From Laetmonice hystrix (lineage: Eukaryota), in the NCBI GenBank assembly GCA_965235115.1, contig OZ249440.1:17174001-17238000 (forward strand): 64,000 bases of DNA. Direction: 5' to 3'. A model generated the notes under the pieces. That model was not told the DNA's origin. It was given only the letters and a program-made list of their open reading frames with translations, and made no database searches. This document shows positions 3,761-62,130 of this stretch, piece by piece. Position 1 is the first letter of the stretch. Each line of letters starts with the position of its first letter. The position numbers and the translations under genes are program-made.

Positions 3761-4870
3761 AATTACTGGCGGTGGGCCAATGTTTTGTCTCATTAACTGA
3801 GAGTCCTGGAGGCTGTTGGCATGGTCGTGTTGGGAGGCAGAAAACGTTATTTATTTGGAGCAGCGGTTCTCGCTGGCCAACCTGCTGATAATCAGATTGT
3901 GTCAGGAGAATTGTGTCGTGGGAGGACTTTTGTGCAATGTAGTAACTTTGACGATCTTGAAGTTTTTAGTTGAAATTTTTAGCATGTGTTCATGCCCTCA
4001 AAGGTTACTGGGTATCTTCATATATTATGTAAGAAAGTAGACAAAAGATCAAACTGACACAGCCTCCTAGCATTACAGGTGCATTAAATGCAATTGAAAT
4101 AGAGTACATGTATATTACATTATTTTAGGTATTTTAGCTATTTAGCCTAAATTAAAATACTACATACTATGAGGCGCACTCGGTTGGAGGACTAGAGTGA
4201 GCCTGCTCACTTGGTGACTAGAATCTTGGCTCCAGTGTGACCTCTCTGTTTGCCGCCTATGGCTCCGCCCTGGCAGAGTCCTAAAGTCCCAGAGCTTACC
4301 GTTAATCAGTTGTTTACCACCGACTCTAAACTCTGGGAGGGATGGCCCCAGGGGGAACCCACTGCAGACTGACTGTCCCCTGTATGGTCAGCCAGCTCTA
4401 TATTGATCCCTATCACCTTGACCCTGAGGTCAGACCACTCGGACCCCTCTAGGGCCGTGTCCGCCGTCAGTGGTGGACGAGTTGGGAAGGCTACCTGGCC
4501 CTCATGAGGCGGCACTTTCCATCCTAATACGCCGCCAGTGTCGGGTGGGGATGTCGTGGATTCGACAGTCGGATAATATTCGGTCTATTAGACCCATTAA
4601 GTTGGGTTTATTCTGCCTAATGTGGGTGGCTGTGTAGCTCAAAGTATTACCAACTTTACCCTCCACGACTCTTGGTATACATATTTTAGTTGAAGATGTC
4701 CGGTACTAACGATGCTGGTGGGATGGTGCCGATTGGCCGTCCTTGGAACGATAAGCTCAACCACATTTCAGATTATATCTCTTAGGAAAACTTCAAAAGG
4801 TTAATAACTTATTTGTGAATGATGGTCTCCATGGCAATATGTGGATAGAAGCTTTCTTCAGCCCACGTAC

Positions 4871-10787: not shown

Positions 10788-11130
10788 NNNNNNNNNNNNN
10801 NNNNNNNNNNNNNNNNNNNNNNNNNNNNNNNNNNNNNNNNNNNNNNNNNNNNNNNNNNNNNNNNNNNNNNNNNNNNNNNNNNNNNNNNNNNNNNNNNNNN
10901 NNNNNNNNNNNNNNNNNNNNNNNNNNNNNNNNNNNNNNNNNNNNNNNNNNNNNNNNNNNNNNNNNNNNNNNNNNNNNNNNNNNNNNNNNNNNNNNNNNNN
11001 NNNNNNNNNNNNNNNNNNNNNNNNNNNNNNNNNNNNNNNNNNNNNNNNNNNNNNNNNNNNNNNNNNNNNNNNNNNNNNNNNNNNNNNNNNNNNNNNNNNN
11101 NNNNNNNNNNNNNNNNNNNNNNNNNNNNNA
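10788..11130. other. Assembly gap, 343 N
   Basis: Run of n; the ORF calls spanning it are artefacts. Confidence 1.
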
Positions 11131-30531: not shown

Positions 30532-30696
30532 GTACTGGTTGAATTCGACGATTGTGAGTGGAAACGGCGAGAATGGATTCGCATTTACGAAATCTTTCAA
30601 GTGTTCATTGTGGAGTATACGTTAGTGTGGGCCCCAAGATGCTATCCAGAGGAGGAATACAAAAAGACAAGGCAACGAATACTATGGCCAGCCCTG
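30532..30696 (+). CDS. JMJD1C: JMJD1C/KDM3-family histone demethylase, internal coding exon (equivalent to vertebrate exon 2), 165 nt, phase 0-0
   Basis: Acceptor ttttttcgtttattccag|, donor ctg|gtaagt. Translates VLVEFDDCEWKRREWIRIYEIFQVFIVEYTLVWAPRCYPEEEYKKTRQRILWPAL, colinear with remembered human JMJD1C VYVEFDDLEWDKREWVKVYEDFSTFLVEYHLIWAKR...QIQWPAL. Confidence 0.93.
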
Positions 30697-31477
30697 GTAA
30701 GTGGAGACTGAAGTGAAATTTAAGCTCGTGACAGTTTGTGTGATGATAATGGAGTTAGATAATATTGGATCCCAACCCTGCACCCCAATACAATTCCTCG
30801 ACACTGCCCGTGGGGGGGGGGGGGGGGGGGGGGGGGGCTGTTGTAACGTCATTTTTCTATACTTTCACTCATCGTTCAAACATAAAATTTTAACATGGTG
30901 AAAATGAAGGTAAAGGGAAGAATTTCACCTGCAGCTTTCAGAACAATTTGCAAAACTTGCGCTAAGTGAATTGTTGTGAAGTTGCCCCTTTAAGAGAGCA
31001 TATTGAAGCTGTTTGAGGTTCCACGTGTTGGTGGTGCTATCAGCGACCTTTGATGGGTAGACTGTGAGATATGTGACAAGGTTGTGACAGGTAGGTTGCT
31101 ATCGCTGGTGGCGGTGGGGGGAGGGGGCAGGGCAGGGTTAGTGAAATCATGGTCATGGGCGTGGTGAAGGTACCGCTAGCACGGTACACCGGAGGACCCG
31201 CCCAAGGGTACATGGCGCTAGACAAAGGGGTCTGAGAGAGGCAGGTAGATACCGGCAGGTAGCTGTCCCTGGGGGTTGGGTAGGGGTGTATGGGGGGTCA
31301 CGCATGACGGATTGCGAGGTCACGCTCTCTAGACTGTATGGGAGTGGGGTGACGGCGACACTCTCACACTGTTTGTTGGTATGTAACAGGTGGGGTGAGT
31401 GAGGGATGGCGCTCTGAAATTGGAGGCTGGCAGCCAGGCACAAAAAATGGAGGGGGAAAAAACAAACCAAATAAACA

Positions 31478-33742: not shown

Positions 33743-33871
33743 TGCTTCGAACCACTCGTTGATAAATCCAGCTTCACCAGCCTGAAGCTGAAACCTGTAG
33801 AGTTTGTTGGAGGACACCGAGAACTGGATTTCTTGGAGGAGTCGGAGATACGCTACTACAAAGTCAGTAAG
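33743..33871 (+). CDS. JMJD1C: JMJD1C/KDM3 next coding exon; ends at 33862 (120 nt) or 33871 (129 nt), both phase 0
   Basis: Acceptor tttctgtttgcag|. Translates CFEPLVDKSSFTSLKLKPVEFVGGHRELDFLEESEIRYYK(VSK), matching JMJD1C TFKPLVE...AVEFL...LDFL. Donors aaa|gtcagt (33863) and aag|gtaagg (33872). Confidence 0.9.
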
Positions 33872-44438: not shown

Positions 44439-46890
44439 GCCTCTAAATTGGCTCAAACACAGGTGTAAATGATATTGTAAGTAACAGATCCACGACTATG
44501 GACCGACTTTGGGGTTGATTTATACGTCTGTGGAAATATTCACTCTATTATATTATTGTTAGTAAACAGGCCGCTGCCGCTGGTTGTATCGGTCGGAGTG
44601 GTGGACTCAATCCACTCCACCCAGTGTGTATAATGTTCATGTTGTCGGGGTCCTGGCTATCGTCACTCAGTGCCGGGCTGACTTGATGACTGGTGACGGT
44701 GACCTGACTCGTGGTCACAGCCCCACCCCGCTCACAGACAGACACTGGGCCTGGCAGCACCTTGACTCTCAGTCTCTAAGTACAGACTAACTGATATTTA
44801 TGTAGAAAAGAGACATGTGTCGTACACGTACAGGTTAAAACGTGTGAAAGTTTACATGTAAACACCGGCTGGCTCCTGTGGTATTAGCGCCAGCGTCGGG
44901 AATCTGATGGTGTTTGAGAGTTGTTACTTTTGTTGTTTGAATTTGATGACATGGAAGACAGAAGGAGCCCACAACAGCAGGTGAATATGACAGGGAATGG
45001 TTGTTAGCTACCTGTACGTGGGCGTGGATCAGGGATGGGGGCTGGGATGGGAGGGGGGGGGGGGGGGGGGGGTCATGAATTAGTGAATCCATACACGTAA
45101 ACTAAGGTTTTACTATTATATCACTGGAAATATCGAAGGGCTGAGTCTGTAGGCGTACTCATACAAGCCAGGGTATCTTGTGTAAATTTGGGAGGCAGCG
45201 GTATGAACCCTATTGCATCTTATATAAAGTTAGGTAAAAATTACTAGGGTTAAGGAGCTTTGATCTTCTATCAAAATGTAAATACCTGTAATCTCTAACT
45301 AAACTAAGGAGAACGCCCATAGCGAGTGTGTGTATCCTGTGACCTTGAATTAGCTGGTTGTGTAAACATGAATGAGAGTAATAGATAAACCATAGATATC
45401 AATAGTGTAGGTGAAGGTCGGAGTCTACCACCTGGCGCGGTGCCCAGGTTATCCAACCAGTCGGAGGTCGGGGGGCGTGTCTGCCAGAGGTAGCCAGTGA
45501 TATTAAACCAATCTCCGGATCCACGTGAATAATTGACATGTACGCGGGGATAGTATGGCAGAGAGGAGGTGTGCTGACGGTGACCGTTTACTCCCCCGGG
45601 CTGGGGGGGGGGGGGGGTATAGTGTGTTAGAGCGGTCGGGTGTTGAGGTAATAGATATGCTGTGTACAGTTGAGTAAGACTAGATCACAGGCGTTAAACC
45701 CTCTCTGCGGATCCACACCTGTTGTTTTTGGTATCACTCACCATTATGGGGGGGGGGGGGGTATTCAGTACTGGTCAGTGTTTGGTAAGCCTGCCGCCTA
45801 CTGGTCAGGTAGTTGTTCACACATCTTCCACCCGCTCTGCTCACACCCCCACCACATATTAACACCGAATTAACCTGGCCGAAGTGTGGCAGAAACTTTA
45901 GAAGCTCGACGATATGAGAGTTAATCAAAGCAGGCACTGGGCTGAAGCATACAGACCTCAGACAATGAACTAGGCCTGTGGCATGTCACACAACCGACCC
46001 AAAGGGCCAAGGTCGGGGCAAGGTCGAATGCTTAGAAGGCTTGTCAAAGGGCATTTGTGTAAGCTGATACGCATGAAAGGCTTTAGGGGAGACAAAATTG
46101 TGTTAATGGCTTTGGTAGTATGCTATAATTGGTGAGGAATTGCGGGCTGATGGTGTGATGGAGAGCAGGTTTAGTTAGTTAGTGGGAGGCGTTGAGTTAC
46201 CGGAGTCACGTTACGGCAGGTCAAGAGGTCGGCTATGTGTGTACGCCGCCACAACAGGGACGTTAATCTCGGCGGATATTATTGCCCAGGTCAGTCCGTG
46301 CCCACATCTTCAGGGCTCTGCAATATGTCAGTTTTATTTTTGACTGTACATACATAGGCAGTGATGGCTTGATCATAGTTGATGGCAGAGTGAGTGAGGT
46401 TATATCAAACCGTGTAAGGTAGTGTGTGAGGGTTTTAAATACTGTCGGCGGTGTGGAGAGAGATGTTTAACTGGGTGTGGTGTCTGAGGTTGCTCCATGT
46501 ACGCCGGAAGACGAGGCGCTGTGAAGGATCGAGTCTGACAAAAACTTTTGATAAATGTATACACAACTGGGCAGGTTGAGATGTAATGGTCAGTGTCGTG
46601 TTCTATAACAAAGGGAAGTCGCTCTCTGTACATGTCGCCATTGTTTTCTGTTCCAGGACATTATTCACCAGTGTCTTCTCCGTGTTTTTAGTCATGGTCG
46701 TGTATTGTCTGGTTTCAGTTGATGTGTTTTGTTAGTGACCCCCCCCCCTCCCGTTTGTATTCTCTTCATGAGCAACGTATACCCATTGGTGACCCATCTT
46801 GATGCCCTTGCCCAATCTCGCCACTGACCGTTTCCATGCCATCCCTTGTCACGTGACCAGTTCCATGACGTATGGTGGTTTCAGTTCCAG

Positions 46891-47097
46891 GATGTGGACA
46901 CGTCGGTGCCGTCGCCGGCCCGTGAACACCCGGAGGTGGTGAAGGAGGTACGCGGCTGGTTGGAGTACCAGGAGGGCCAGAGCATCCTCCTGACCACGCC
47001 CTCCGTCCTGGTTGGTTTCAGGGTGGAGGTCTACCGGGCTGAGGGCACTACACAGTGGTACACAGCCGTTATACAGTCCTACAACGACAGCACCAGG
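46891..47097 (+). CDS. JMJD1C: JMJD1C/KDM3 coding exon, 207 nt, phase 0-0
   Basis: ttccag| acceptor, agg|gtgagt donor. DVDTSVPSPAREHPEVVKEVRGWLEYQEGQSILLTTPSVLVGFRVEVYRAEGTTQWYTAVIQSYNDSTR matches JMJD1C ...GYRVRVYRQDSATQWFTGII... Confidence 0.93.
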
Positions 47098-53959: not shown

Positions 53960-54440
53960 GCTACAAAGCGACAGTTTGATATCCTACACAAATGGAGCTT
54001 GGATGGAGTTTGTTTTTAATGCACAGTTCAGTTTCAGAAGCACATTTTCATGATAGTGTGCAACGTGTGTGTCAAGGTTGGCCCGAGCTGCTGGGATTCT
54101 TTACACATCCCGCTATTCATGAATCAAAGCTGAGAGGCCCTCTCAAAGGGAGGGACTCCTTGTCAGCATCCATCCCACATTCCTGAATCCACAGGACATG
54201 TGGCAGGGTGTGTAGATAAGAGCCCTCGATCGTTATCATTGCTGACCATGCACCGACTGGTCTGGGGGTCTCTAGTCTATACTATTAAAAAGATGGTTTC
54301 CGAGCCGGGATATTTCTTTGATCGCCATGGTGGCATTCAGTACTCGTACATTGTATTCAGCAATGAATGTCTCCATGTTTCCATTGATGTGTTTTTTTCC
54401 CTTCCTGATTATGTTTTTACCCACCGTGGTCTTGTTATTG
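53960..54440 (-). mobile_element. Decayed LINE endonuclease fragment (I-clade-like)
   Basis: GNMETFIAEYNVRVLN...GNHLFNSID resembles the EN segment RG..IE.FI....L..LN...GT.S.IDL. Confidence 0.45.
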
Positions 54441-54501
54441 TTAGTGGGAGACTTTATGGCCGATGTATGACCTGTAGCTGACCTTTGACCTTTGCCTGCA
54501 G

Positions 54502-54586
54502 GAGTTGAGTGTCACTGACGACACGGTGTTGGAGGAGCACAATGAGGACCCTGCCCTGGTGCAGATGAAGCTCATTGGAGACGGAG
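54502..54586 (+). CDS. JMJD1C: JMJD1C/KDM3 coding exon, 85 nt, phase 0-1
   Basis: Acceptor cctttgacctttgcctgcag|, donor gag|gtaaga. ELSVTDDTVLEEHNEDPALVQMKLIGDG matches JMJD1C MIVMNDQVLEPQNVDPSMVQM. Confidence 0.92.
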
Positions 54587-55879
54587 GTAAGACCTAATTT
54601 TCTTTGTACTTTGTACATGAGGGACAGAGGTATTGTAACGTATTCGAGACAGAGATAAGAACTTAAGCATTGTATTACAGCATTGAACAGCAAGGTGAGG
54701 AATTTTCTTTTGTATTATAACATTTGTGACAGCGGAATTCTGTTTCCACTCCACTGTATCCTTGGGACAGAGGCGAGAGCAGCGACTTTTTAGTGAAGTG
54801 TTTTGTAGTGTTTTGCAGCCAGTTCACTACTCAAGCCGTAAAATGACCGGATAACTGGTAGCCATGTTTGATGTACTCAGAACAGAAACAGCGTCAGATG
54901 ATAATAAATTTGAGAAAAGGTCTGGAGCTAAAGATGGAAGGGATTCGGGGGAAACAAAATGGGACACTACTAAACGTATGGACAAAGGACCGTGGCTGTC
55001 ATCCGAGGTGTAACCTTACACGATGTTGGCCATGTCAGGCCCTCCTGCCTCAGTTTCACAGACCGCACTGGCAAGTTTAGATGTTGTTGTTGTGGATTTC
55101 AATCAGCAGCAATCTTGGATTTCCACATGTAGGTGTGAAGTGCCCTTTCCTTTATACGATTTCTTCACTGGGTAAGGAGGTCAGAGCTGGTGGTGAACCG
55201 AGAGATGAATATCTTTCCGCCAGGGGTGAACTATAAATTTGAGGACTCAGAGGGTAGTAAACGTTGATTATTATCTTCAGAGCGCAAAGGCTGCTAGAAC
55301 CCAGGCTGATCCAGGTGACTGACTGACTGTGAATTTCTATTTCTGTTTTAACTCCCAGATTAGTTCTGTTTGGATATCGATCGGAATGAGATGTGAATTT
55401 TCTGTGTGTATGTATGCACATATCAAAATGACTGCTCAGGTGTGTTGGCAGCCTCTACCGCAGAAGTTATAGTTTACAGATGAAGAATAAGACACGATTA
55501 TTGGGGTATACTTTGAAGGAGGGGGAGCCCCCGATGGAAGACATGAGGAGAGAGGGCTAGTTGTACCCCAGATCTCGCTGCAGGGTGGCTGCGTTCATGA
55601 GGGGTGCATGACCCCTACCCGAGACATAAGTCACCTCTTTGAGACAGTTTTATAGGAAGCCAGGGAAATATAACACCATTTGCTGACAGCCCCCTACTGC
55701 CGTATGCCGCTCGAGCATGGCTCACATTGGGGTTGAGGCGATTGGTACTGGTAGGGTGGGTGTTGGTTATCAGAACAGTTGGGGGACCGTTTGTAAGCTA
55801 TGTCACATTATTGACTTTATTGACTCATATCAGTTTGGGTTGATACGGTGATTCGGAATGCCTCAGCAGTCGCGGATTA

Positions 55880-56190
55880 TTTATGATGGGGAGAAATGCC
55901 CCACCAACTGGTCTTAAATGCCCCGCCAACCAGTCTTAGATGTTTATGAGGAGGAAAGGCCCACCAGCCAGTCTCAGATATCTATGAGGAGGAAAGTCCC
56001 AACCGCCAGTCTCAGATTATTTATGAGGGGGAGGAAAGTCCCAACCGCCAGTCTCAGATATCTATTATGAGGAGGAAAGTCCCACCAGCCGGTCTCATCT
56101 ATGATGAGGAGGAAAGTCCCAACCGCCAGTCTGGAGCTATTTATGATGAGGAAAGCCCCACAAACCAGTATTAGATTGATGAAGATTGGA
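55880..56190. repeat. Minisatellite of about 38-42 bp carrying NF-kB consensus sites
   Basis: Unit atgaggaggaaagtcccaaccgccagtctcagatatct; ggaaagtccc (reverse complement GGGACTTTCC) at 55991, 56033, 56074 and 56111, ggaaagcccc at 56150. Confidence 0.9.
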
Positions 56191-56391
56191 AGGAATGTAC
56201 ACTCTGTAACCCCCCACCCCAACCCCCAACCCCAACCCATCAGCACCAAAGACCAGCTGGGGGAAGCACCCCATTGCGCCCTCCGCGACCTCCCTTTACA
56301 AGTATACACTGGAAGGAGCCGTGAGGCCACAGTGAGCTGTTTACAGTATTGAAGTATGGCGCAGTTCACGCAAGTGTCTAATATAGCCCGA

Positions 56392-56486
56392 TATAAATAA
56401 CCAGCCAAGCAAAGTGGCGCCGTATAGACAGGCCGATAAGGCCGCCATGCTATTTGAGAGTGAACTACCTCCGACCATGGGTGAGT
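56392..56486 (+). promoter_or_regulatory. Candidate internal TATA promoter and alternative first exon (MLFESELPPTM + 1 nt, phase 1)
   Basis: TATAAAT at 56392-56398, GCCGCCATG with ATG at 56447, 11 codons plus one G, then |gtgagt at 56481. Phase equals the end phase of exon 54502-54586. Confidence 0.5.
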
Positions 56487-59319
56487 GAGTGGGTGAGTTC
56501 AGAGCGAGTGGGGCTGGGGTGCCCGGCCTCTCACCTGCCCCTCCCCCCTCCCAACGTAAACAGATCCCTGTCTGCCCAAGTGGCAGTGACACCCGCCCCT
56601 AGACGCCCCTCCCCTCTCAATCCACCAGTCGTCTCGCAACGAAAGTTGTGGTGTGGAGGGGAGGGGACATACCTCACAGTGGCTTCAATTTCAATTCAGC
56701 AAATAAAAAGGAAAAAAGTCAAGTCTCAGAGTTTTTTCCCCCTTTCTCTTGTGACCTAAAAACGCAAGTGTACGTGCTTGGGAATTCAATGTTGTTTAAA
56801 TTGACTGGGGAGGGAGATGTTTGCTATAAACGACAAGTAGAGGGGCTCAGGTTGTTTTTCTATGGGGAATAGTAAGTCGGTTGTTGGATAGAATACCCAG
56901 GCCGAGTGTAAACACATATCGCCGACTGGGCCGGCCTGTCGAGGACCAATGTAAGCACGCCTGAGCTACTAAGCACAACCGGCAATGGCGACGTTTCCCC
57001 CAGCGTTCCTTCTTGGCAGACCACTTTGTCTTGTGAGTTATTATACAAATATGGCACTTGGTTGAGTGCAATATTAACATTTATTGCACAGTCATATTTA
57101 TACTATTTATCGTTGTGATTGCTGTCTCCTTTCATTATTTGGCCCACAAGGTGATGGGAGTTTGGAAGCCGTGTAATTGGTTAAGTGGATTGTGTATGTG
57201 TCGACACTGTTTTCTGGTTATGTTTATGGTCAAAAAGGAGTTCAGTTACGTTTTATGATAACAGTTGTGAAATGACGAGGTCAGATTCCGCGGACCTTTA
57301 TCGCTCAGTCATAATAACGTCTGTGGTCGGGGGTAGAATCATAATCATGTCTGGTGACAGGAATGAGGGGTGTTTTTGCTACGGTATTGTGTACTGGTTC
57401 ACAGACCCGCTGGGCCTCCAGGCCTGATAGAGTATGTATAATATAGTCCGAGGGCTACATTATATATACATAGTCATAGTCTGACAGTGGTGGTTGCAGA
57501 ATAGGTCGTGATTTTAGATTTAGATATCGAAGGGCCAGGGCCAGGGTGGGAATTGACCTTGGCTTAGTTTCCAGTCGATCGTGACGTAAATATGAGACGC
57601 GGCCGGTGATAGTATACGTCACGGGACGTATGGTAGACTGACAGTATTACACCGTGATACTGATAGCCTCCATCCGACCAAAAAAACTGATGTCAGTCTT
57701 CGTGGAATATAAGTCGGTGTTTAGGTCTAAGCATGTGACTGCTGTTACTACGGTTACATCTGCTGCTACTACTACAACTACGACGGTGCCATCTGCTGCC
57801 CCAGTGTGCCGCTGCACCTGTTGCGGGCCACACCGACACTGCGTAGTTAGGCCATGACGGTAACGAGATATCAAGTCATGCTCCCGGGACGACCAGCAGA
57901 GGTAGTCAGACGTTTCAGGTCATGATCAACAGAGCCGATGGCATTTTGTCACGTCCCGGGACGTGGAGGGAGACTTGTTTATGTGTGTTAAAATGTGCGA
58001 GTTGATGGTATAGGCAAATGAATATGGTGTCCGTGCTTGAGTCGGCAACGTAGTGACAGTTGGTGTTGGATTGTCTTGAATTCTATGTTCATACTCCCAA
58101 TGTTCACCTAGGATAATGTTTATTTGTGCCCCCCCCCCACCCCCTCTGCATCTGAATACTGTCTGACACTGGTCAGTTACACCGACTGACCCCACCAGGC
58201 GCCTGATAACTTGGCGGATGGACGGATGAGTTGTGAATGACAATGGAGTCAATTAGGTGTAATCTCAAGTAGGACGTTAATGATAGACCAGGACATGAAA
58301 GTATGGCAATATAGTCTGTGGATAGCGGGAGGTGTTCCCCTGCTCAATGATGTAATGCATTGTAGCGTGCATTATTAGAGTGACAACGGAGTGAATTATG
58401 TAAGCTTAAAGGAGTTGTCATGTATATCTCGAGACGGTAAATAATGCAAGGGTCACGCCGCTCCGTTATTCTCATAGTGACATGCGTGATAACAAACATG
58501 TCAAGTAGTAATATTGTATGCCCTGACGCTCCGCCCTAATGGAGGCAATGTATGGAGTTTTAATGTTTCTCTGGGCTCGGTGGGAGTGTTGGAGGTTGGT
58601 GGTTGGGGGGCTGCGAGCACAAAGTAGTTGGGTGATGTGGTGGGGTCATTCGACCAGCAGGGGTTTAAGCGGGTTAATAGTACCAACCCGCGGGGGCGGA
58701 GAGATCTATTAAAAGAAATAAAAGTATTTAAATGAGCTTGAGTGTCGCTGGAGCGATAAATGGTTGTCGGTCGGCACTCAAATAGATGTAGGGTGGGGAG
58801 GTCAAGCGGACAGTGGGGGTGGGGAGGGGGTGAGGGTAATGACCCTTAAGGTGCAACTGTATTAAACCGGTGCCGCCATATAATGTCAATGCAGGTGGAG
58901 GTGAGTGAATGTTGACTGGAGTGTGCAATACTGGCTTCTGTCTGACCTGGCCCGGAACAAAAGGGGTCAAGTTGGGGTCAGTCCACGGCCCAGTGGACGG
59001 CTGGTTGACCGGGTGTGCTGCCACGTACCCGGGGCCTTGTTATGGACCCCCACCGGACCCACCCCTAACCTGGGGTCACAGTGACAGGTAGACACGTGTC
59101 CATCACCTGACTACCACTGCTGGGTGTGAGTAAATTAGGAGGGGGGTATGATTTGTCAACAGTATTTCAGCCAGGCTCGGGGCGAGATTGAAACTTTAAA
59201 AACTTGTTCAGTCGTTGGACCAGATCGTTACAATAACATAGGAGTGAATGGAAGGCTGCTGGTTACAGCCACCATTCACTGCTGTGTTAACTTAACGATC
59301 TGGTTATTAACCAGCCTTA

Positions 59320-61044: not shown

Positions 61045-62130
61045 AGGACATGTGAGGTGTCGCATCGTCGTCAGCATGACTTCACAAACTCGGGGGAATT
61101 TTCTTTGGGGAAAAATCAAGGATTTTGAAATTGACCCAGATGTGAAAAATTTCGCCAGTCAATTGAATTTCAGGTGTGCATTGTCAGTGTAGTGTTCATA
61201 ATTGACAAGCCTAAAATTCTTATCATGAAATGAATTAGAGGGGGTACGTAAACATTTGTCATCTCCAGCAGAGACAGTAGCTGTCACACTTGGAGAAGCG
61301 GCCAGGCTAGGTCGATTGCGTGCCTCTGGGTGGACTGTAATCACTGTACATGCATGTCTGCGCCAGGAAGTGGTGGCTGAGAGAGCGTGGGAGAATGGGA
61401 GCCTGACCGTAATAAGGTCAAGGTGGTCGTATATAACGGTGGCGTCATACAGGGTGTGTTTGTGTCACACACCGTGTGTATGTGTGGTCACAGCTGGCCG
61501 ACCTGCAGCAGCCATGTGGGGGAGCATGTCAGAAGGCGGTCGGGGGGAGGAGGTGGAAACTGGCGTTTGATTACGGCTGGTTATAATGTGACCCCCAAAT
61601 TGACACCAGCTGGTCCTGCCCCCCCCCCCCCAAATCCTTCCACCCCTCCAGGTGGAAGGATGGGGGGGGGGGGGGCAATGCGTTTGTTATTGTGGTGGAT
61701 AAAATTGGCGCAACAGGAGTTGATAAACAAATATCGCAACACCCAAAAGCTATATGGTAGGCCGAATGGACACTATGTGCATTGATGTGGTCCCTCGTGC
61801 ACCACGCCAACAAATTATGGTTGGCCAAAAAGCCTTAGCGAAGTCTCCGATTGCGTAGGGAACCAGCGAGACTAAAACTCTGTGTGGGGAGGTTGTGTGT
61901 GTGGTGGTGGGGGGGGGGGGGGGGGTTGGAAATCAATACGTGCTTATTGATCGGATCTCTTTGAAGTTGGCAAAGCGTCGCGTCTGAAAAAAACGGTGTT
62001 GGGAAAGTGAGGCACTTTAAGAACAAGTAAGTTCATCTGGGTGGTTGAACTTTAGTCAAGGAGGGGTAATTTATGGTCAGCCCCACTCAGCGTGGCGAAT
62101 GACGGGCAAGGCTTGTGAATAATGCAGATT

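What the first reader, a model, noticed from the sequence alone, without database searches (positions are those of the whole stretch)
56392..56498. Phase-matched alternative first exon predicting an N-terminally truncated KDM3/JMJD1C
Seen: TATAAAT, then an ideal Kozak GCCGCCATG 55 nt later, MLFESELPPTM plus G, and |GTGAGT in phase 1, the same phase as the upstream exon's donor (54586). Neighbouring GTGAGT copies at 56485 and 56493 give the wrong phase or include a TGA. Established, from memory: vertebrate JMJD1C has shorter isoforms from alternative first exons. Inference: this exon splices to the next downstream exon, producing a protein lacking the whole conserved N-terminal domain but keeping the downstream zinc-finger and JmjC regions.
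Basis: partly seen in the sequence, partly recalled or inferred. Interest (0 to 1): 0.75.

Follow-up and report, generated by a model that had tools for sequence, protein, structure and literature searches.

The report
Candidate alternative first exon of KDM3
Inside a long intron of a histone-demethylase (KDM3/JMJD1C-type) gene of a spiralian invertebrate lies a short stretch that has every sequence mark of a second gene start that would make a protein without its N-terminal reader domain; the design fits the gene and matches isoforms annotated in molluscs and known in humans, but no RNA data could be reached, so it remains about an even bet and would be ordinary if true.

Summary
The two neighbouring GTGAGT copies give phase 2 or fall after a TGA.

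The host is a 173-kb KDM3/JMJD1C-type gene on the + strand. The exon ending at 54586 is the last Tudor exon. The next exon lies 20.3 kb downstream of the candidate, outside the window, and its acceptor is phase 1. The spliced product would read MLFESELPPTM-V-VESILKGENLG... It would lose about 240 residues (PWWP/Tudor) and keep the zinc finger and JmjC.

Annotated isoforms of a chiton, a clam and a mussel transcript use alternative first exons joined to the same exon in the same phase. For the chiton I confirmed on DNA that this exon lies in the orthologous intron. Human JMJD1C has a form 219 aa shorter.

A background model expects 0.011 such constellations in this intron.

No RNA run was reached, because my run search was intron-heavy. 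There are no close relatives, no CpG-rich signature, and two competing donors. The transcript is therefore unproven: about 0.42 real, 0.40 chance.

The parts
54502..54586 (+). Constitutive exon, the last part of the Tudor_KDM3B domain (ELSVTDDTVLEEHNEDPALVQMKLIGDG + G). Its donor GAG|GTAAGA is in phase 1.
55880..56190 (+). Minisatellite (38-42 nt unit, about 6 copies). It carries 4 x GGAAAGTCCC and 1 x GGAAAGCCCC (kappa-B-type decamers) 233-456 nt upstream of the TATA. It is a possible upstream element of the candidate promoter.
   Evidence: These are the only such sites in the 64-kb window (0.68 expected). All arise from one duplicated unit.
56208..56238 (+). C-rich repeat (AACCCC/CACCC-like), about 155-185 nt upstream of the TATA.
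56392..56398 (+). TATAAAT, a candidate TATA box 55 nt before the ATG. The predicted start of transcription is near 56421-56426.
   Evidence: Histone genes of this genome have their TATA 49-77 nt before the ATG.
56447..56480 (+). Candidate coding part of an alternative first exon: ATG (context GCCGCCATGC), MLFESELPPTM, then G as the first base of a split codon. A second in-frame ATG lies at 56477 in ACCATGG.
56481..56486 (+). Candidate 5' splice site TGG|GTGAGT, phase 1.
   Evidence: It matches the donors of confirmed exons of this gene in form.
56485..56498 (+). Two competing GTGAGT motifs. TGA|GTGAGT at 56485 is in phase 2. TGG|GTGAGT at 56493 follows an in-frame TGA and is as strong as the first donor.

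Best explanation
The stretch is a candidate internal TATA-type promoter with a short first coding exon of the KDM3/JMJD1C-type gene.

Inferred steps, none of them shown:
- Transcription would begin about 25-30 nt after the TATAAAT, near 56421-56426.
- The first ATG (56447) opens an 11-codon frame, and the exon ends at 56480.
- The donor at 56481 is spliced across 20.3 kb to the acceptor of the next constitutive exon (C5:17250773, outside the window).
- The protein MLFESELPPTM-V-VESILKGENLG... continues as the canonical one.

What is shown is that the motifs are present, that donor and acceptor phases match, that the spliced frame is open, and which domains would be lost and kept. The product would lack about 240 N-terminal residues, the PWWP/Tudor reader region. 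It would keep the long disordered middle, the zinc finger and the JmjC catalytic domain.
For: - Motifs and phases are confirmed.
- The gene model places the candidate directly after the last Tudor exon.
- The TATA-to-ATG distance of 55 nt falls within the 49-77 nt seen at histone promoters of this genome.
- No ATG lies between the predicted start of transcription and 56447.
- The chance expectation of the constellation in this intron is 0.011. The candidate is the only hit in 488 kb-strand of real sequence.
- The stretch is unique sequence, not a transposon copy.
- The same architecture is annotated elsewhere. Liolophura sinensis isoform X3 starts from an exon that I mapped inside the orthologous intron, joined in phase 1 to the VVDSILRG exon.
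- Ruditapes philippinarum X3 and X4 and a Mytilus transcript contig join other N-termini to the same exon, with the junction codon changed as phase 1 predicts.
- Many molluscs have Tudor-less forms about 232-236 aa shorter.
- Human JMJD1C has a described isoform 219 aa shorter (PMC3623819).
- The chiton's annotated alternative exon also lies in CpG-poor DNA, so the lack of a CpG-rich signature here does not count against the model.
Against: - There is no RNA evidence of any kind. The only runs found are DNA.
- No same-species protein or transcript was found in the protein collection.
- No close relative was available, and the peptides of the annotated mollusc alternative exons are unrelated, so conservation is untested.
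- CpG observed/expected is 0.44-0.53 at the site, against 0.62 for the gene and 0.8-1.3 at the canonical 5' end.
- The GCCGCC context is not the start context seen in this genome.
- The donor sits in a GTGAGT-rich simple tract. One equally strong donor 12 nt downstream would bring in a stop, and a second donor 4 nt downstream would shift the frame. This looks unselected.
- About ten other in-phase ATG-donor pairs exist in the intron.
Confidence: 0.42

Rival explanations
1. Chance constellation. The TATAAAT, the ATG and a GTGAGT-rich simple tract happen to lie together in unselected, unique intron sequence. The stretch is removed with the 22-kb intron and has no function.
For: - All the motifs are short and frequent. 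TATAWAW occurs 0.57 per kb, GTRAGT 0.49 per kb, and GCCRCCATG 7 times in 488 kb-strand.
- Ten in-phase ATG-donor sites lie in the intron.
- A second TATA + ATG + phase-1 donor lies 12 kb downstream in the same intron.
- Three overlapping donors in two phases make a phase match easy.
- There is no CpG-rich signature, no RNA, and an 11-codon frame carries no coding signal.
- The site was picked by eye among many possible patterns.
Against: - Under criteria calibrated on this genome's histone promoters, only 0.011 is expected in the intron and 0.78 (any phase) in the 488 kb-strand searched. The candidate is the only hit there.
- The position in the gene is exactly where relatives have alternative first exons.
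Confidence: 0.4
2. A real transcription start with another fate. The kappa-B-type minisatellite, the C-rich tract and the TATA would form an enhancer or promoter. Its transcript would be non-coding or unstable, or would use the donor at 56493 or 56485, or another acceptor. In that case no Tudor-less KDM3 protein starts at 56447.
For: - Five kappa-B-type decamers cluster 233-456 nt upstream, the only ones in the window.
- The competing donor at 56493 is as strong as the first and brings in a TGA.
- No long open frames suggest a nested coding gene in the intron.
Against: - There is no RNA evidence either way.
- The five sites come from one duplicated unit, so they count as one event.
- No Rfam family matches the site. 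The only matches in 54000-59000 are far below their thresholds and lie downstream of it.
Confidence: 0.12
3. A recursive-splicing (ratchet) point, or a cluster of U1-binding sites that helps to process the long intron rather than an exon.
For: Three 5' splice-site motifs lie within 18 nt, in a 22-kb intron.
Against: A ratchet point needs an acceptor AG directly before the GT. Here the bases before the three GT are GG, GA and GG, with no polypyrimidine tract.
Confidence: 0.03

Closest known systems
Liolophura sinensis (chiton) KDM3/JMJD1C-like gene, annotated isoform X3 (XP_064602585.1)
   Same: An alternative first coding exon lies inside the orthologous intron, between the last Tudor exon and the VVDSILRG exon. 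It is joined in phase 1 to that exon, and the product lacks the PWWP/Tudor region. I mapped it on the genomic locus L051. It also lies in CpG-poor DNA.
   Different: Its exon encodes 56 residues unrelated to MLFESELPPTM. It lies only about 200 nt before the acceptor, against 20.3 kb here. It has no evident TATA box. It is an annotation whose RNA support I could not inspect.
Ruditapes philippinarum isoforms X3 and X4 (XP_060600677.1, XP_060600678.1) and a Mytilus transcript contig (P0294)
   Same: Different short N-termini (for example MSEIKQEVQSENEF) are joined to the same exon. The junction codon changes (V to I, V to M) as a phase 1 junction predicts.
   Different: The peptides are unrelated. 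The genomic position of those exons was not checked, because the Ruditapes gene range was too long for DNA to be served.
Mollusc isoforms that start at M(K/R/H/Q)LIDDG (Saccostrea, Gigantopelta, Haliotis, Octopus, Mytilus, Patella, Sinanodonta, Liolophura X4)
   Same: These are Tudor-less KDM3 proteins about 232-236 residues shorter than the full form. They show that N-terminally truncated forms are a recurrent annotation in spiralians.
   Different: They begin at the conserved Met inside the last Tudor exon (VQMKLIGDG here). Their alternative 5' end therefore lies upstream of that exon, not in the intron after it.
Human JMJD1C isoform 2 / s-JMJD1C (Wolf et al. 2007, as cited in PMC3623819)
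   Same: It is a described isoform of a KDM3-family gene that is 219 aa shorter at the N-terminus.
   Different: It is a vertebrate paralogue. I did not check its exon structure or whether it arises from an alternative first exon in the equivalent intron.

Membership tests
KDM3/JMJD1 family gene (host gene) | JmjC domain of KDM3 type near the C-terminus | tested here: met
   PF02373 matches at C5:17312598-17312843 on the + strand. That exon is 75-78% identical to KDM3 proteins of molluscs and arthropods.
KDM3/JMJD1 family gene (host gene) | N-terminal PWWP_KDM3B / Tudor_KDM3B region and the KDM3 zinc finger | tested here: met
   PF22987 matches at 46984-47097 and 54487-54585 with E 2.8e-11 and 3.7e-6. 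PF22988 matches only weakly at 30604-30699, E 0.22. Exon-by-exon tblastn to full-length homologues includes the zinc-finger exon at 136309-136593, counted on from the window.
Alternative first coding exon of this gene | ATG-started frame open to a consensus 5' splice site, sense strand, inside an intron | tested here: met
Alternative first coding exon of this gene | Donor phase equals the acceptor phase of the next constitutive exon, and the spliced frame is open | tested here: met
   The donor is in phase 1. The acceptor ...tttcag|TTGTAGAA is in phase 1. The joined translation is MLFESELPPTMVVESILKGENLG....
Alternative first coding exon of this gene | Transcripts that start at the site (capped 5' ends) | not testable with these tools
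   The single run search returned three DNA runs of one sample and no RNA run. The query was 96% intron, so RNA runs holding only the 85-nt exon fell under the tool's threshold.
Alternative first coding exon of this gene | Junction reads from 56480 to the next exon | not testable with these tools
   Same as above. No joints or loose ends appear in the DNA contigs.
Alternative first coding exon of this gene | Conservation of the exon in related species | tested here: inconclusive
   The nearest proteins found are molluscs, at about 75% identity in JmjC. No same-species or close-relative protein was found. The alternative N-termini annotated in molluscs are unrelated in sequence.
TATA-box core promoter | TATA consensus at the usual distance upstream of the start of transcription | tested here: inconclusive
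   TATAAAT is present. Its 55-nt distance to the ATG lies within the 49-77 nt of this genome's histone genes. The start of transcription itself is unknown.
Recursive splice (ratchet) site | Acceptor AG with a polypyrimidine tract directly abutting GTRAGT | tested here: not met
   The bases before the three GT are GG, GA and GG, and there is no pyrimidine tract.

The most novel reading that the evidence does not exclude
The kappa-B-type minisatellite (5 sites), the C-rich tract and the TATA box form an NF-kB/Rel-responsive internal promoter. On immune or stress signals it would switch a spiralian KDM3 demethylase to a Tudor-less form, coupling innate-immune signalling to an isoform change in an H3K9 demethylase.
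Probability: 0.1. Interest if true: 0.5.

Novelty: new member of a known kind. Interest (0 to 1): 0.22.

Why it matters
If real, the exon would show that this animal also makes a KDM3 demethylase without its N-terminal PWWP/Tudor region. Such a form is annotated again and again in molluscs and described for human JMJD1C. The promoter upstream, with its repeated kappa-B-type sites, would suggest when the short form is made. In itself an alternative first exon is an ordinary feature of large animal genes, and nothing here changes what is known about the family.

Tried and rejected
- **RNA evidence.** The single run search, on 54400-56700, found only three DNA runs of one sample. Laying them gave flat DNA cover with no joints. 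In hindsight the query was too intron-rich. An exon-rich query might have found RNA runs, so 'no RNA holder' is not evidence of silence.
- **Same-species proteins or transcripts.** A search with the horseshoe-crab homologue over the Tudor/VVESILKG region found no same-species protein. A search with the 1008-aa open frame of the next large exon found nothing at all.
- **Transposon or LTR origin.** Rejected. 55300-57030 is single copy, and a multi-copy MITE-like end starts only at 57031.
- **Nested coding gene in the intron.** No convincing open frames, only repeat-derived ones.
- **Known RNA families.** Only two sub-threshold matches, both downstream of the site. No tRNA was found.
- **CpG signature.** At first I took the lack of a CpG-rich signature as evidence against a promoter. 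I withdrew this when the chiton's annotated alternative exon proved just as CpG-poor.
- **'Ideal Kozak'.** Down-weighted after looking at histone genes and the canonical start codon.
- **Larger random genome sample for the background rate.** A Markov simulation was used instead.
- **Ruditapes locus.** The gene range was too long for DNA to be served. Isoform look-ups by exact sequence failed because only the longest product is on record.

Full report
**1. The observation**

Reading 56100-56800 confirms each element at the stated place.
- TATAAAT is at 56392-56398.
- GGCCGCCATG has its ATG at 56447-56449, 55 nt after the first T of the TATA.
- The codons for MLFESELPPTM run from 56447 to 56479, followed by G at 56480 and GTGAGT at 56481-56486. 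The donor is therefore in phase 1.
- The GTGAGT at 56485 would give phase 2. The one at 56493 lies after an in-frame TGA (56486-56488).
- The upstream exon is 54502-54586, with a phase 0 acceptor and the phase 1 donor GAG|GTAAGA.

Two small corrections apply. Position +4 of the start context is C, so the Kozak match is not complete. A second in-frame ATG at 56477 sits in ACCATGG directly at the donor.

Independent DNA contigs of three runs of one sample carry the same sequence. They differ only at 55874, 56409, 56569 and 56648, and none of these sites touches the TATA, ATG or donor. The stretch 55300-57030 is single copy in the 627-Mb genome.

**2. The gene**

The window is C5:17174001-17238000.
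- A JmjC match lies on the same strand at C5:17312598-17312843.
- Tudor_KDM3B (PF22987) is split over 46984-47097 and 54487-54585.
- PWWP_KDM3B matches weakly at 30604-30699.

I aligned full-length homologues exon by exon, counting coordinates on from the window. Coding exons lie at 30532-30696, about 33743-33862, about 46885-47097 and 54502-54586. The next lies at 76773-76897 (C5:17250773-17250897, outside the window). After that come a 2.9-kb exon within the open frame 111176-114199, further exons, the zinc finger near 136309-136593, and JmjC from 137984 to 139145.

The canonical start codon (MAHKYREEIVGKRFLSV...) lies 34 kb upstream of the window, at C5:17140041. The gene spans about 173 kb. 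The candidate lies in the 22.2-kb intron that follows the last Tudor exon.

The best-matching homologues are molluscs (Sinanodonta, Liolophura, Saccostrea and others) at about 75% identity in JmjC. This points to a spiralian with no close relative in the protein collections.

**3.

The acceptor of the next exon reads ...gtttttggtttcag|TTGTAGAAAGT. The canonical codon is G|TT, so the acceptor is in phase 1. Joining 56447-56480 to 76773-76897 gives MLFESELPPTMVVESILKGENLGIAPRRRSCNV.... This is identical to the canonical protein from the junction codon on.

The product would lack about 240 residues, the PWWP/Tudor region, and keep everything downstream. The structural half of the interpretation therefore holds.

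**4. Is it more than chance?**

Loose criteria do not make the site special. In 164 kb of + strand, TATA (20-120 nt upstream) + ATG + open frame + GTRAGT in phase 1 occurs at three loci, one of them 12 kb further on in the same intron. The intron offers ten donor sites with an in-phase ATG. The three overlapping GTGAGT copies in two phases also make a phase match easy.

I then calibrated the criteria on true TATA promoters of this genome. The histone H2A, H2B, H3 and H4 genes have their TATA 49-77 nt before the ATG and always A at -3. The criteria became: TATAWAW 45-80 nt upstream, the first ATG after it, purine at -3, and a frame open to GTRAGT. In 20 Mb of order-3 Markov sequence trained on the local 244 kb, this occurs 1.6 times per Mb-strand, and 0.5 times in phase 1. 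That gives 0.011 expected in this intron. In the 488 kb-strand of real sequence I hold, the candidate is the only hit.

The GCCGCC context adds little. Neither the histone genes nor the canonical start of this gene (cgtgtcATGG) use it.

**5. Comparable isoforms elsewhere**

Cluster members of the mollusc homologues and their N-termini show three recurrent kinds of shortened forms.
- (a) Forms that start at the conserved Met of the last Tudor exon, M(K/R/H/Q)LIDDG. These are found in eight species and are about 232-236 residues shorter.
- (b) Forms with a different N-terminus joined to the VVDSILRG exon. These are Liolophura X3, Ruditapes X3 and X4, and a Mytilus transcript contig. The junction codon changes (V to L, I or M) exactly as a phase 1 junction predicts.
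- (c) Forms that start in the next large exon (MHYKK...).

For kind (b) I fetched the chiton locus and mapped the exons.
- The last Tudor exon is at L051 56255-56341.
- The VVDSILRG exon starts at 61790.
- The X3 first exon is at 61419-61586, inside the orthologous intron, with donor GAC|GTAAGT in phase 1.

For humans, PMC3623819 describes a second JMJD1C isoform 219 aa shorter and cites the s-JMJD1C paper.

**6. What speaks against it**

- No RNA could be reached. My one run search used a stretch that is 96% intron and returned three DNA runs only. Laying them showed flat DNA cover. This is a limit of my query, not evidence of silence.
- No same-species protein turned up.
- CpG observed/expected at the site is 0.44-0.53, below the gene's median of 0.62 and far below the 0.8-1.3 of the canonical 5' end. 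The chiton's annotated alternative exon is equally CpG-poor (0-0.13 against 0.7-1.2 at its canonical 5' end), so I give this no weight.
- The donor lies in a GTGAGT-rich simple tract. An equally strong donor 12 nt downstream would bring in a stop, and another 4 nt downstream would shift the frame. This does not look like a selected coding exon.

**7. Weighing**

I took a prior of about 0.3 that a coding alternative first exon exists in this intron, because two to three of eleven annotated molluscs show one. I took a few per cent for the chance that a real one would carry a TATA at this distance, a purine at -3 and a GTRAGT donor. Set against 0.011 expected by chance, this puts the odds near even.

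My figures are:
- 0.40 for a chance constellation
- 0.12 for a real start of transcription with another fate (non-coding, another donor or acceptor, or an enhancer transcript)
- 0.03 for a role in intron processing

A ratchet site is excluded by the missing AG before the GT.

**8. Surroundings**

- Upstream lies a minisatellite (55880-56190) with four GGAAAGTCCC and one GGAAAGCCCC. These are the only such decamers in the window. A C-rich repeat follows at 56208-56238.
- Downstream lies a stable hairpin at 56606-56666, with free energy -37.1 kcal/mol and z -3.9. Its weak match to an archaeal H/ACA family is far below threshold.
- A multi-copy MITE-like end starts at 57031.

**9. Verdict**

Its central claim, that a transcript starts here, is untested. 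If true it is a new member of a known kind and of modest interest.

Noticed in passing
window 55880-56190: A minisatellite of about six 38-42-nt units. It carries four GGAAAGTCCC and one GGAAAGCCCC (kappa-B-type decamers), plus GGAAAGGCCC at 55953. These are the only such sites in the 64-kb window (5 found, 0.68 expected). They all come from one duplicated unit.
   Followed up: partly
window 56606-56666: A G/C-rich hairpin (CCCCTCCCCTC ... GGAGGGGAGGGG) with free energy -37.1 kcal/mol and z -3.9 against shuffles. It lies 125 nt downstream of the candidate donor. Its only Rfam match (Pab91, 33 bits against a threshold of 71) is a chance-level hit.
   Followed up: partly
window 57031-57089: The end of a multi-copy element, with at least 70 matches on many chromosomes at 84-96% identity. 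The matches often come in oppositely oriented pairs about 100 nt apart, which looks like MITE terminal inverted repeats.
   Followed up: no
L002, about 4430-4475 (C5:17242430-17242475; 68430-68475 counted on from the window): A second TATA + ATG + GTGAGT phase-1 constellation in the same intron (ATG context ACTGACATGT, donor GGT|GTGAGT, TATA 83 nt upstream). It is a rival candidate or a sample of the background.
   Followed up: no
L016 6041-6199 (C5:17140041-17140199): The canonical first coding exon of the gene (MAHKYREEIVGKRFLSVRSASKLKTNKISEWEWRSGVVRAV...), 34 kb upstream of the window. It lies in a 4-kb CpG-rich patch (observed/expected 0.8-1.3) flanked by strongly CpG-depleted DNA.
   Followed up: partly
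window 54565-54567: The conserved Met of VQMKLIGDG, at which eight mollusc annotations start their Tudor-less isoform, is present here too. A short form could therefore also arise from a start of transcription upstream of exon 54502-54586.
   Followed up: no
L021-L033 and L034-L047 (C4:36.53-36.63 Mb; C20:7.16-7.20 Mb): Two tandem arrays of histone gene clusters, with units of about 7.4 kb and about 6.6-7 kb. TATA boxes lie 49-77 nt before the start codons, and A is at -3 throughout.
   Followed up: partly
window 55874, 56409, 56569, 56648: Single-base differences between the DNA contigs of the three runs of one sample, probably heterozygous sites. 56409 G>A lies between the TATA and the ATG.
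   Followed up: no
window 10788-11129: A run of 342 N (assembly gap or masked). It was left untouched.
   Followed up: no
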